Source: Hemiscyllium ocellatum (Eukaryota). From it: a stretch of DNA of 64,000 nucleotides. Below, in pieces: positions 52,001 to 55,000 of the stretch. A model generated the notes under the pieces. The model saw only the letters and a program-made list of their open reading frames with translations. It was not told where the DNA came from and searched no databases. The stretch's first letter is position 1, and each line of letters begins with the position of its first letter. A program made the translations under genes and the position numbers. Location: positions 35,364,533-35,428,532 of the forward strand of contig NC_083432.1 of assembly GCF_020745735.1 (NCBI RefSeq), written 5' to 3'.

Positions 52001-55000
52001 ACCAGTGGTGCTCTGCAAGGATGTTTTGGGGCCACTGCTGTTGCCAATTTTAAAAATGATCTGGATATGGGCATAGAGAATGGGTTAGTAAATTTGCGGA
52101 TGACACTAAGGTAGGCAGAGTTGCGGATTGTGCTGAAGGATGTGGTGGGTACAGAGGGACATGAATAAGATGCAGAGCTGGGCTAAGTGGCAAATGGAGT
52201 TTAATGCGAAAAAGTGAGGCAATTCACTTTGGAAGAAGTAACAGTAATGCAGAGTACTTGACTAATGGTAAAATTCTTGGCAGTGTAGATGAACAGAGAG
52301 ATCTCGGTGTCCTAGTGCATAAATCCCTGAAAGTTGCCACCCAGTTTGATAGGGTTAAGAAGGCTTATGGTGTGTTGGCGTTTATTGGTAGGGGGAATGG
52401 ATTTCGGTGCCATGAGGTCATACTTTAACTGTACAAGCCATTGGTAAGGCTGCAACTGGAGTACTGCATGCAGTTCTGGTCACCGCATTATAGGATTGAT
52501 GTTGAAGCTTAGCAAAAAGTGTTCAGAGAAGATTTACTAGGATGTTCCTGGTATGGAAGGAAGGCCTAACAAGGAAAGGCTGAGAGAAATGAGGCTGTTT
52601 TCACTGGAGAGAGGAATGTTGAGAGGTGACTGAATTGAGACATACAAGATTATCATAGGGTTAGATAAGGTGAACAGCGAGAGTCTTTTTCCTCAGATGG
52701 GGAAGGCTAACACAAAGGGACATAGATTTAGGACAGATATTAGGGGTAGTTTCTTCTCTCAGTAGTAGGGGCATGGAATGGCTTGCCTGCAACAGTAGCA
52801 GACTCGCCGACGTTAAAGGCATTTAAATGGGCATTGGACATACATATGGATAACAATGGAATGGTGTAAGGTGGATGGGCATCAGATTATTTTCACAGGT
52901 CGGCACAACATTGAGGCCAACCGCTGAAGCGGTCTATGTTCTATGTGCATGTAAGATATGCAAGGACCAAACAGACAAGTGATATTTCTGGTAATTCTTG
53001 AACAATGCAAATTAATCTATTACTTTTTGGTCAAAGTTGGTTCAAACATCAGTTAATGTACATGCTTCACCAGCAAATTTCTACTCTGCCACATTAACAA
53101 CCTCTTGGCAAAAAACATTATCTTTCTTGCCATTGAATGGATTACCATTTCTATAATGAGGTTTCCTTGTGTACCCTATGGCAGTCAACATTCCATCCAA
53201 ACAGCCAATCGCTAAAGACTTCCACAGGTGGCCAAACAACAAATGAAAGCCACTTTGATCAAAATGACAGCCTTTTCATACAGCAAGATAGCAGTTGGAT
53301 TATGAATTAAAATTGATGCTGAAATATGTTTCACTCAAACCATTTTAAAATCTTAAAATATATTTTTATTGAAAAACAGATTTTTAAAATATTACAACAA
53401 ATACAAAACAATACAATTCAAAACAATACAAAGAACCAACATTTTAAAAACCCAATCATGGCCTGATGTACAAATATATATAAAAATATAAAAACCACAA
53501 CTAAACTAAATAAATAATAACTAACATCAAAATAATAAATAATAATAAATAAAAATACACCTCAGCAAAACAAAACACTAACTCTCGAATATCACAAGCA
53601 CTCATTTTCACATTCATACGTTCGCAGTTCCCCCCACCTCTGGATACTGAACTCTTAAAGCACAATCATTACAGCTATTAAAATCACTTTTCAAAATTAA
53701 TTTTAAGGTAATTAAAAGTTAAAACACTGTACAAATACAAAAGTTTTTTTGCAGGGTCAGATCTATTGCTCAGTAATAATCACTCAGATGGCCTTTAAAT
53801 ATCCAGCTACACTTGATCAAACAGCAACCCAACAGCACAAGAAAAGGAACATCTTGCCACATCAACTGACTTCAATGACTATTGGCACCGGATGTCAGGG
53901 CCCCACAGCTAAAAAGTTGATGTGGTGAGAACTTCCTTTTTTCAACAGAGCTTACTATCTAAAGGACTGCATTACCTGGCCACGTGTTACTTAAAAAAAA
54001 AGAATGTTTTGTACTTTGCATTAAGTAAAAGGCACAATTATCAGTAATCTATATTAAATCATTAAACTTTAAATATAAACTTACCAAACCTTCCTGTTGG
54101 TTAGGCAGGATCAAAACAAAAACAGAAGATTAGATTAATTTTAATGTGTAGCAATCATTTAATTTCTTCTAACTTTCTGCTGCTTTAAGTCAGCAATCTC
54201 AGCATTATCCTGTCTCACTGAACATTTCATTCCAAATTAAACTAAGCTACGTGGGTAAAATTTTCAATTCTTTACCTGTATATAAACCAAACCAGAAAAC
54301 GCTGGCCTTTGCAAAATTGAACAGCTAATGGCAATTGTCTGCTATACTAATCAGCAACAACTTACTTGTTTAATCCAAAGAATGTTGCAAGTTATGGATC
54401 CTTGGATTTCCTTGTAAATATCATAATTTAAAAATTAAGTAAAGTTGAAAATTTTGGAAACCTGTCACTTGAGATGTTTGAATATGGTTTATGATGCTCT
54501 CCCAAATGTCATGTCCATGTATAACATGTCGCAGCAATTCTAAAGTAGGCAAGTTGCTTTGCCATTGCTATTGAAGACAAAGTAATGGAAAACTTGTCCC
54601 CAATAGAAATAAGTGAACAGACTAATGGTCAGGTATCACTATGATGAAGTAATCACATGGAGGAAAGAGTGCAGCCAGCATACAAAAGTTGTTAACTACA
54701 TTCAGAACACTGTCTTAATACTAAATGCCAAGTGCACACTTGACCTGCCTTTCCTTTTCACAGATGCAAACTAATATCTGTGCTTTCCAGCTTTGGCAAT
54801 ATCTTGGATTTTCTAATCTTTTAACCTTATATTGTAGTATAGGTAATGCAAGCTTTTGCTTTCAACATTTAACAGCATACTTGTAGTTACAATTTTAATA
54901 CATTTGCAAAGATGCAAAATCTGCATCAAAACACCTGCTTTCACAAGGCCAATACTGACTTGTATAATTGTTAAAAAAAATTACTTTGTTCATCCTAGTG

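What the first reader, a model, noticed from the sequence alone, without database searches (positions are those of the whole stretch)
54078..54135. 9-nt RUNDC1 microexon with a neural SRRM3/4-type signature
Seen: perfect GTAAGT donor, CAG acceptor, an upstream T-rich tract displaced by a UGC at -14..-12, in unique sequence within a repeat-filled 10-kb intron. It adds EGL in frame at the exon 1/2 junction between predicted coiled-coil segments. Established: this layout typifies SRRM4-dependent neural microexons, which gene predictors usually miss. Inference: an ancient tissue-specific RUNDC1 switch.
Basis: partly seen in the sequence, partly recalled or inferred. Interest (0 to 1): 0.7.

Follow-up and report, generated by a model that had tools for sequence, protein, structure and literature searches.

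The report
Known RUNDC1 neural microexon, shark copy

Summary
The motif is there as described. On the minus strand it reads CAG|GAAGGTTTG|GTAAGT (exon 54093..54085), with UGC at -14..-12. It lies in single-copy sequence inside the 10,434-nt first intron of RUNDC1 and is in frame (phase 0), adding Glu-Gly-Leu.

The splice-like layout alone is no better than chance, at about one AG|N9|GTRAG per intron. Comparison shows the exon is real:
- The window's spliced RUNDC1 is 100% identical to the single 566-aa Hemiscyllium ocellatum RefSeq protein, which lacks the exon.
- RefSeq isoform X1 of Chiloscyllium plagiosum, Scyliorhinus canicula and Rhincodon typus carries EGL at exactly this junction.
- Lungfish and many ray-finned fishes carry E/D/G-x-L there.
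- In intron 1 of whale shark, elephant shark, pike, arowana and Danionella, the only AG|N9|GTRAG site encodes EGL, EDL or DEL (chance below 1e-3 per intron).

Published VastDB-based tables already list this exon as zebrafish DreEX0007654 (9 nt) and human HsaEX0055952 (6 nt). In zebrafish its neural PSI is 93, and it drops about 50 points in srrm3/4 eMIC mutants.

Verdict: real, ancient, SRRM3/4-type and already known; only its annotation in this species is missing.

The parts
54085..54093 (-). 9-nt RUNDC1 microexon GAAGGTTTG, coding Glu-Gly-Leu, phase 0-0
   Evidence: Sequence and frame. The same EGL is annotated at this junction in Chiloscyllium, Scyliorhinus and Rhincodon isoform X1. The whale shark genomic orthologue is GAAGGATTG, differing by one synonymous change.
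54079..54084 (-). 5' splice site GTAAGT, with G as the last exon base
   Evidence: It is the only one of the intron's 4 GTAAGT sites kept in whale shark. GTRAGT is present in all five compared loci.
54094..54135 (-). 3' splice-site region: candidate branch point CTAAT (54133-54129, branch A at 54130, position -37), pyrimidine-rich tract, UGC, then CAG acceptor
   Evidence: The AG-free stretch is 70 nt. CTAAT at -34 to -41 is shared by the three chondrichthyans. The branch point is inferred from the consensus only.
54105..54107 (-). UGC motif at -14..-12, the presumed SRRM3/4-responsive intronic enhancer
   Evidence: UGC sits at the same -14..-12 position in whale shark, elephant shark and pike, at -9 in arowana and at -20..-18 in Danionella. 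Binding was not tested.
58240..58614 (-). RUNDC1 exon 1 coding part (ATG at 58614, 125 codons), the upstream constitutive exon
   Evidence: The spliced CDS is 566/566 identical to XP_060704597.1.
47647..47805 (-). RUNDC1 exon 2 (53 codons), the downstream constitutive exon

Best explanation
This is the Hemiscyllium ocellatum orthologue of the conserved RUNDC1 neural microexon, VastDB events DreEX0007654 in zebrafish and HsaEX0055952 in human.

Shown here:
- A 9-nt, frame-preserving cassette exon lies in intron 1.
- Its coding content (E/D-x-L), strong donor, AG-free upstream zone and acceptor-proximal UGC are conserved from chimaeras to teleosts.
- It inserts Glu-Gly-Leu at the end of a flexible linker, just before the second long helix of the RUNDC1 N-terminal region.

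Inferred:
- In most tissues the 9-nt exon is too short for exon definition and is skipped, giving the annotated 566-aa protein.
- In neurons, SRRM3/SRRM4 bind the UGC-containing enhancer next to the acceptor through their eMIC domain. They recruit early spliceosome factors, so the exon is included and a 569-aa isoform results.
- The three extra residues lengthen or re-register the linker-helix junction. This may tune interactions of the N-terminal helices; RUNDC1 is reported to clasp the ATG14-STX17-SNAP29 complex. That last step is speculation.
For: - Species and annotation: the spliced window CDS is 100% identical to the H. ocellatum RefSeq protein, which lacks the exon (cluster listing).
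- Sharks: isoform X1 of C. plagiosum (XP_043530939.1), S. canicula (XP_038635389.1) and R. typus (XP_048470713.1) reads ...LDNA-EGL-[TS]EREK.
- Other fishes: lungfish X1 has EEL. Of 105 ray-finned fish representatives, 20 carry a 3-residue insert at this junction, and 19 of those are EDL, GDL, EGL, EEL, DEL, GNL or VDL.
- Genomic loci: in whale shark, elephant shark, pike, arowana and Danionella, the single AG|N9|GTRAG site of intron 1 encodes EGL, EDL, EGL, EGL and DEL. Simulated introns give an E[GDE]L site in at most 1 of 3000 trials each.
- Control sites: only this GTAAGT of the 4 in the intron is kept in whale shark. The single exon difference from whale shark is synonymous.
- Splicing signals: a UGC lies within 9-22 nt of the acceptor, and there is a 41-141-nt AG-free zone, in the five loci scored.
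- Literature: zebrafish PSI is 93 in neural tissue against 0-30 elsewhere. dPSI neural is +90 and dPSI in the eMIC mutant is -50.5. The human orthologue has dPSI neural +53 and +49 on eMIC overexpression. The human 6-nt exon rises with SRRM4 in the PMC7935315 tables.
- Structure: the linker and helix context comes.
Against: - There is no RNA evidence from this species.
- Identity around the exon between the two carpet sharks (0.90-0.92) is at the top of the range for the intron but not unique.
- The exon can be lost in some lineages. The thorny skate's alignable spot has no GT donor and no UGC. Presence of the sequence therefore does not prove use.
- I did not inspect the zebrafish or human DNA. 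Orthology to the VastDB events rests on gene, length, carp and Danionella DEL, and the paper's own human-zebrafish pairing.
Confidence: 0.9

Rival explanations
1. The exon is real and conserved, but in sharks it is a broadly used alternative exon rather than a neural, SRRM3/4-switched one.
For: Tissue data exist only for zebrafish and human. The human 6-nt orthologue already shows 24-49% inclusion in the non-neural baseline samples of PMC7935315. Zebrafish shows 30% in endocrine pancreas and 14% in muscle. No shark tissue was examined.
Against: The acceptor-proximal UGC, long AG-free zone and strong donor are conserved at the same positions in chondrichthyans. A 9-nt exon normally needs a dedicated enhancer. 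Regulation is conserved between zebrafish and human.
Confidence: 0.07
2. In this species the sequence is a retained but unused relic, a pseudo-exon. This would explain why RefSeq annotates only the 566-aa form.
For: H. ocellatum has a single annotated protein without the insert. A lineage loss seems to have happened in the skate. The bare motif is expected by chance about once per intron.
Against: Every functional element is intact: AG, frame, EGL, GTAAGT, UGC and the pyrimidine tract. They match those of the sister genus Chiloscyllium at the peptide level and of whale shark at the DNA level, where the isoform is annotated. The only exon substitution against whale shark is synonymous. Gene predictors commonly miss 9-nt exons when neural RNA-seq is thin (established knowledge).
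Confidence: 0.03

Closest known systems
Zebrafish rundc1 microexon DreEX0007654 (VastDB; PMC12626424, Supplementary file 1)
   Same: Same gene and same length (9 nt). It is classed MIC_Neural, with PSI 93 in neural tissue, and falls about 50 points in srrm3/4 eMIC mutants. Cyprinid relatives place a 9-nt DEL exon in intron 1 at the same exon 1/2 junction (carp isoform; Danionella locus). The layout is the same: UGC near the acceptor and a GTAAGT donor.
   Different: The peptide is DEL in carp and Danionella and EGL here. UGC is at -20..-18 in Danionella and at -14..-12 here. The intron is about 1 kb in Danionella (about 2.9 kb in zebrafish by the paper's coordinates) and 10.4 kb here. Expression and regulation are measured in zebrafish and only inferred in the shark. 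The zebrafish DNA itself was not examined.
Human RUNDC1 microexon HsaEX0055952 (VastDB; PMC7935315 tables; paired with DreEX0007654 in PMC12626424)
   Same: It is paired with the zebrafish exon as its orthologous event. It is neural-enriched (dPSI +53), rises with eMIC or SRRM4 expression, and preserves the frame.
   Different: It is 6 nt (2 residues) rather than 9 nt, and has substantial baseline inclusion in non-neural cells. No human sequence was looked at here.
RefSeq RUNDC1 isoform X1 of Chiloscyllium plagiosum, Scyliorhinus canicula and Rhincodon typus
   Same: They have an identical EGL insertion between ...LDNA and [TS]EREK. The whale shark genomic exon GAAGGATTG has the same acceptor context (gatcctgcctaaccaacag) and a GTAAGT donor.
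   Different: H. ocellatum has no annotated X1 isoform. One synonymous base differs from whale shark.

Membership tests
SRRM3/4 (eMIC)-dependent neural microexon | Length of 3-27 nt, usually frame-preserving | tested here: met
   9 nt, phase 0 to phase 0, no stop codon.
SRRM3/4 (eMIC)-dependent neural microexon | UGC-containing enhancer close to the 3' splice site, downstream of the pyrimidine tract, with a long AG-free zone | tested here: met
   UGC at -14..-12 and a 70-nt AG-free stretch. The same position is seen in whale shark, elephant shark and pike. The motif definition comes from established literature, not from a test of binding.
SRRM3/4 (eMIC)-dependent neural microexon | Strong 5' splice site | tested here: met
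   G|GTAAGT, conserved as GTRAGT in all compared loci.
SRRM3/4 (eMIC)-dependent neural microexon | Neural-enriched inclusion | not testable with these tools
It is shown for the zebrafish orthologue (PSI 93 against 0-30) and the human one (dPSI +53).
SRRM3/4 (eMIC)-dependent neural microexon | Inclusion depends on SRRM3/SRRM4 | not testable with these tools
   Shown only for orthologues: -50.5 in zebrafish eMIC mutants, +49.4 on eMIC overexpression in human cells, and SRRM4-responsive in PMC7935315.
Orthologue of the annotated vertebrate RUNDC1 exon 1/2 microexon | Same intron and same insertion point in the protein | tested here: met
   The insert falls exactly between the exon 1 and exon 2 residues in shark, lungfish and ray-finned fish isoforms. 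Genomic candidates lie in intron 1.
Orthologue of the annotated vertebrate RUNDC1 exon 1/2 microexon | Conserved coding content beyond chance | tested here: met
   EGL, EDL or DEL is encoded by the only AG|N9|GTRAG site in five further introns. The simulated probability is at most 3e-4 per intron.
Orthologue of the annotated vertebrate RUNDC1 exon 1/2 microexon | Flanking intron sequence alignable to an annotated orthologue | tested here: met
   The whale shark alignment shows 0.90-0.92 identity over the exon and its flanks, and only this GTAAGT is retained. This is high but not unique within the intron.

The most novel reading that the evidence does not exclude
The 9-nt E/D-x-L form, with its UGC fixed about 14 nt from the acceptor, is the ancestral jawed-vertebrate state of the RUNDC1 microexon. 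It is present but unannotated in the elephant shark. It was later shortened to 6 nt on the human lineage and lost in skates. This would make RUNDC1 a compact case for following the birth, resizing and death of one neural microexon, and perhaps a neuron-specific tuning of autophagosome-lysosome fusion.
Probability: 0.5. Interest if true: 0.3.

Novelty: already known. Interest (0 to 1): 0.15.

Why it matters
It matters little beyond annotation. The epaulette shark RefSeq gene model should gain a 569-aa isoform. The case also shows that raw-sequence reading can recover a 9-nt exon that the gene predictor missed. The comparative data place this microexon, and the position of its UGC enhancer, at the base of jawed vertebrates, which fits the published view that neural microexons are deeply conserved. 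What EGL does to RUNDC1 is unknown in any species.

Tried and rejected
There is therefore no read-level evidence.
- No letters of 56939-56999 were sent to any search tool afterwards. Two later sandbox scripts did read the whole intron from the local window file, for shuffling and for a self-comparison.
- The exon 1 protein search returned mostly genomic ORFs running into the intron. Only 2 of 120 reached exon 2, so it was uninformative for splicing.
- Full-text paper searches for RUNDC1 together with microexon or SRRM4 terms found nothing. The evidence was in supplementary tables only.
- Genomic DNA for Chiloscyllium and Scyliorhinus could not be fetched because the files were too large. Polypterus X1 is not on record. 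Hagfish RUNDC1 is in UniRef only, so cyclostomes were not examined.
- PMC10589263, the RUNDC1-ATG14 paper, is not held, so the region of RUNDC1 that binds ATG14 is unknown to me.
- I rejected the 45-nt in-frame candidate at 54410-54366 because it is not conserved in whale shark.
- I rejected the idea that the motif alone is significant.

Full report
**Observation.** On the minus strand the window reads ...ttctgtttttgttttgatccTGCctaaccaaCAG|GAAGGTTTG|GTAAGTttat.
- The 9-nt segment is 54093..54085. The acceptor AG is 54095-54094 and the donor GTAAGT is 54084-54079.
A pyrimidine-rich tract lies upstream of it, and the 70 nt before the acceptor hold no AG.
- A CTAAT at 54133-54129 is a plausible distal branch point. 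This rests on the consensus only.

**Gene context.** RUNDC1 lies on the minus strand.
- Exon 1 runs from the ATG at 58614 to 58240, 125 codons ending in phase 0, followed by GTAAAA.
- Exon 2 is 47805..47647. Exon 3 is 41678..41480, exon 4 is 40726..40616, and the last coding exon is 40047..39194.
- The spliced CDS gives 566 residues. It is 566/566 identical to XP_060704597.1 of Hemiscyllium ocellatum, so the window is epaulette shark.
- In the protein collection this species has one RUNDC1 protein, without an isoform label and without the insert.
- Intron 1 is 10,434 nt.
- The 53900-54300 stretch has no second copy in the window, whereas at least a fifth of the intron does.

**Is the motif more than chance?** Taken alone, it is not.
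- The intron has four GTAAGT sites. One other gives an open 45-nt candidate.
- First-order Markov simulations of the intron give about one AG|N9|GTRAG site each.
- The case therefore rests on comparison with other species, not on the motif.

**Protein-level comparison.**
- A search with a teleost RUNDC1 across the junction returned about 105 ray-finned fish representatives that could be scored. In 79 of them exon 1 joins exon 2 directly.
- Twenty carry exactly three extra residues at the junction. Nineteen of these read EDL, GDL, EGL, EEL, DEL, GNL or VDL, typically in RefSeq 'isoform X1' against 'X2'.
- A search with the window's last exon and a cluster look-up recovered the cartilaginous fishes. 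Isoform X1 of Chiloscyllium plagiosum, Scyliorhinus canicula and Rhincodon typus reads ...LDNA-EGL-[TS]EREK..., the very tripeptide predicted here.
- The lungfish X1 isoform has EEL.

**Genomic comparison.** Five further RUNDC1 loci showed a candidate exon. In each, intron 1 holds exactly one AG|N9|GTRAG site, and that site encodes the expected peptide.

| Species | Locus and position | Exon | Peptide | Annotated? |
|---|---|---|---|---|
| Whale shark | L001:4469-4477 | GAAGGATTG | EGL | yes |
| Elephant shark | L002:4537-4545 | GAAGATTTG | EDL | no |
| Pike | L003:1625-1633 | GAGGGCCTG | EGL | yes |
| Arowana | L004:1954-1962 | GAAGGCCTG | EGL | yes |
| Danionella | L005:1541-1549 | GATGAATTG | DEL | no |

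- Simulated introns produce an E[GDE]L site in at most 1 of 3000 trials.
- The acceptor AG, the G-A-x-G...T-G core and GTRAGT are invariant in the alignment.
- UGC is at -14..-12 in the window, whale shark, elephant shark and pike. It is at -9 in arowana and at -20..-18 in Danionella.
- The window and whale shark introns align throughout at about 75-80% identity, so flank identity is a weak test. The exon region reaches 0.90-0.92, which is high but matched by one other stretch.
- Of the four GTAAGT sites in the window's intron, only this one is retained in whale shark.
- The single exon difference from whale shark is synonymous (GGT to GGA).

**What is already known.**
- Supplementary file 1 of PMC12626424 lists RUNDC1 DreEX0007654, 9 nt, class MIC_Neural. 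dPSI neural is +90.0 and dPSI in the srrm3/4 eMIC mutant is -50.5.
- The same table pairs it as conserved and regulated (REG_50) with human HsaEX0055952, which has dPSI neural +53.1 and +49.4 on eMIC overexpression.
- Average zebrafish PSI is 93 in neural tissue, 30 in endocrine pancreas, 14 in muscle and 0-7 elsewhere.
- PMC7935315 lists the human exon (6 nt) among exons that rise with SRRM4.
- The microexon, its neural bias and its SRRM3/4 dependence are therefore published for two vertebrates, and the shark isoform is in RefSeq for three species.

**Mechanism.**
- Shown: the exon and its splicing signals are conserved across jawed vertebrates.
- Shown: in an AlphaFold2 model built on 30 homologues, EGL (residues 126-128 of the Chiloscyllium X1 isoform) ends a low-confidence linker (107-129). 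The linker lies between helices 45-106 and 130-164.
- Inferred from the orthologues and from the established model of eMIC action: the exon is skipped by default and included in neurons, when SRRM3/4 act on the UGC enhancer.
- Speculative: the three residues alter the linker-helix junction and so change partner binding. RUNDC1 is reported to hold the ATG14-STX17-SNAP29 complex (reviews only).

**Limits.**
Inclusion in this species is therefore untested.
- Those positions were not sent to any search tool afterwards. Two local scripts read the whole intron from the window file.
- The candidate RNA runs of this organism (X1, X2) remain unexamined.
- I did not see the zebrafish or human DNA.

**Side observation.** In the thorny skate, intron 1 has no AG|N9|GTRAG site. 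The weakly alignable spot reads caacag|CATGTTTCG|gcatgt, with both the donor and the UGC gone. Skate RefSeq isoforms also show no +3 form. This suggests a lineage loss.

**Verdict.** The feature is real and ancient, but it is already known. Only its annotation in H. ocellatum is missing.

Noticed in passing
L006:5907-5915 (Amblyraja radiata RUNDC1 intron 1): The thorny skate has no AG|N9|GTRAG site in intron 1. The weakly alignable orthologous spot reads caacag|CATGTTTCG|gcatgt, so the GT donor, the UGC and the E-x-L coding are all gone. Skate RefSeq isoforms show no +3-residue form. This may be a lineage loss of the microexon.
   Followed up: partly
L002:4537-4545 (Callorhinchus milii); L005:1541-1549 (Danionella cerebrum): Intact orthologous 9-nt exons (GAAGATTTG = EDL; GATGAATTG = DEL) with GTAAGT donors and a nearby UGC. 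They are absent from the annotated proteins of these species (P0526, P0402, P0310).
   Followed up: partly
window 54366-54410 (-): A second in-frame, stop-free candidate exon (45 nt, [15 protein letters not shown]) with a perfect GTAAGT donor but a weak pyrimidine tract. It is not conserved in whale shark, where local identity is 0.3-0.5. It is probably a pseudo-exon and serves as an internal control.
   Followed up: yes
The tool says this also trips by chance and is evidence of nothing. They lie in a stretch of intron 1 (56858-57282) that has other copies elsewhere in the window.
   Followed up: no
window 49319-52700 and 55440-57282 (intron 1), 42800-47200 (intron 2): Both strands hold reverse-transcriptase-like and endonuclease-like ORF fragments, with sequences repeated up to 9 times within the window. 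These are retroelement debris filling the RUNDC1 introns.
   Followed up: no
P0518 (Stegostoma tigrinum), P0340 (Sparus aurata), P0419, P0424, P0428, P0446, P0477 (turtles, birds): Several public RUNDC1 models look mis-built around this junction. The zebra shark model is 699 aa. The others carry inserts beginning 'VS...' right after exon 1, which is what reading through the GT donor into the intron would give. They are not the microexon.
   Followed up: no
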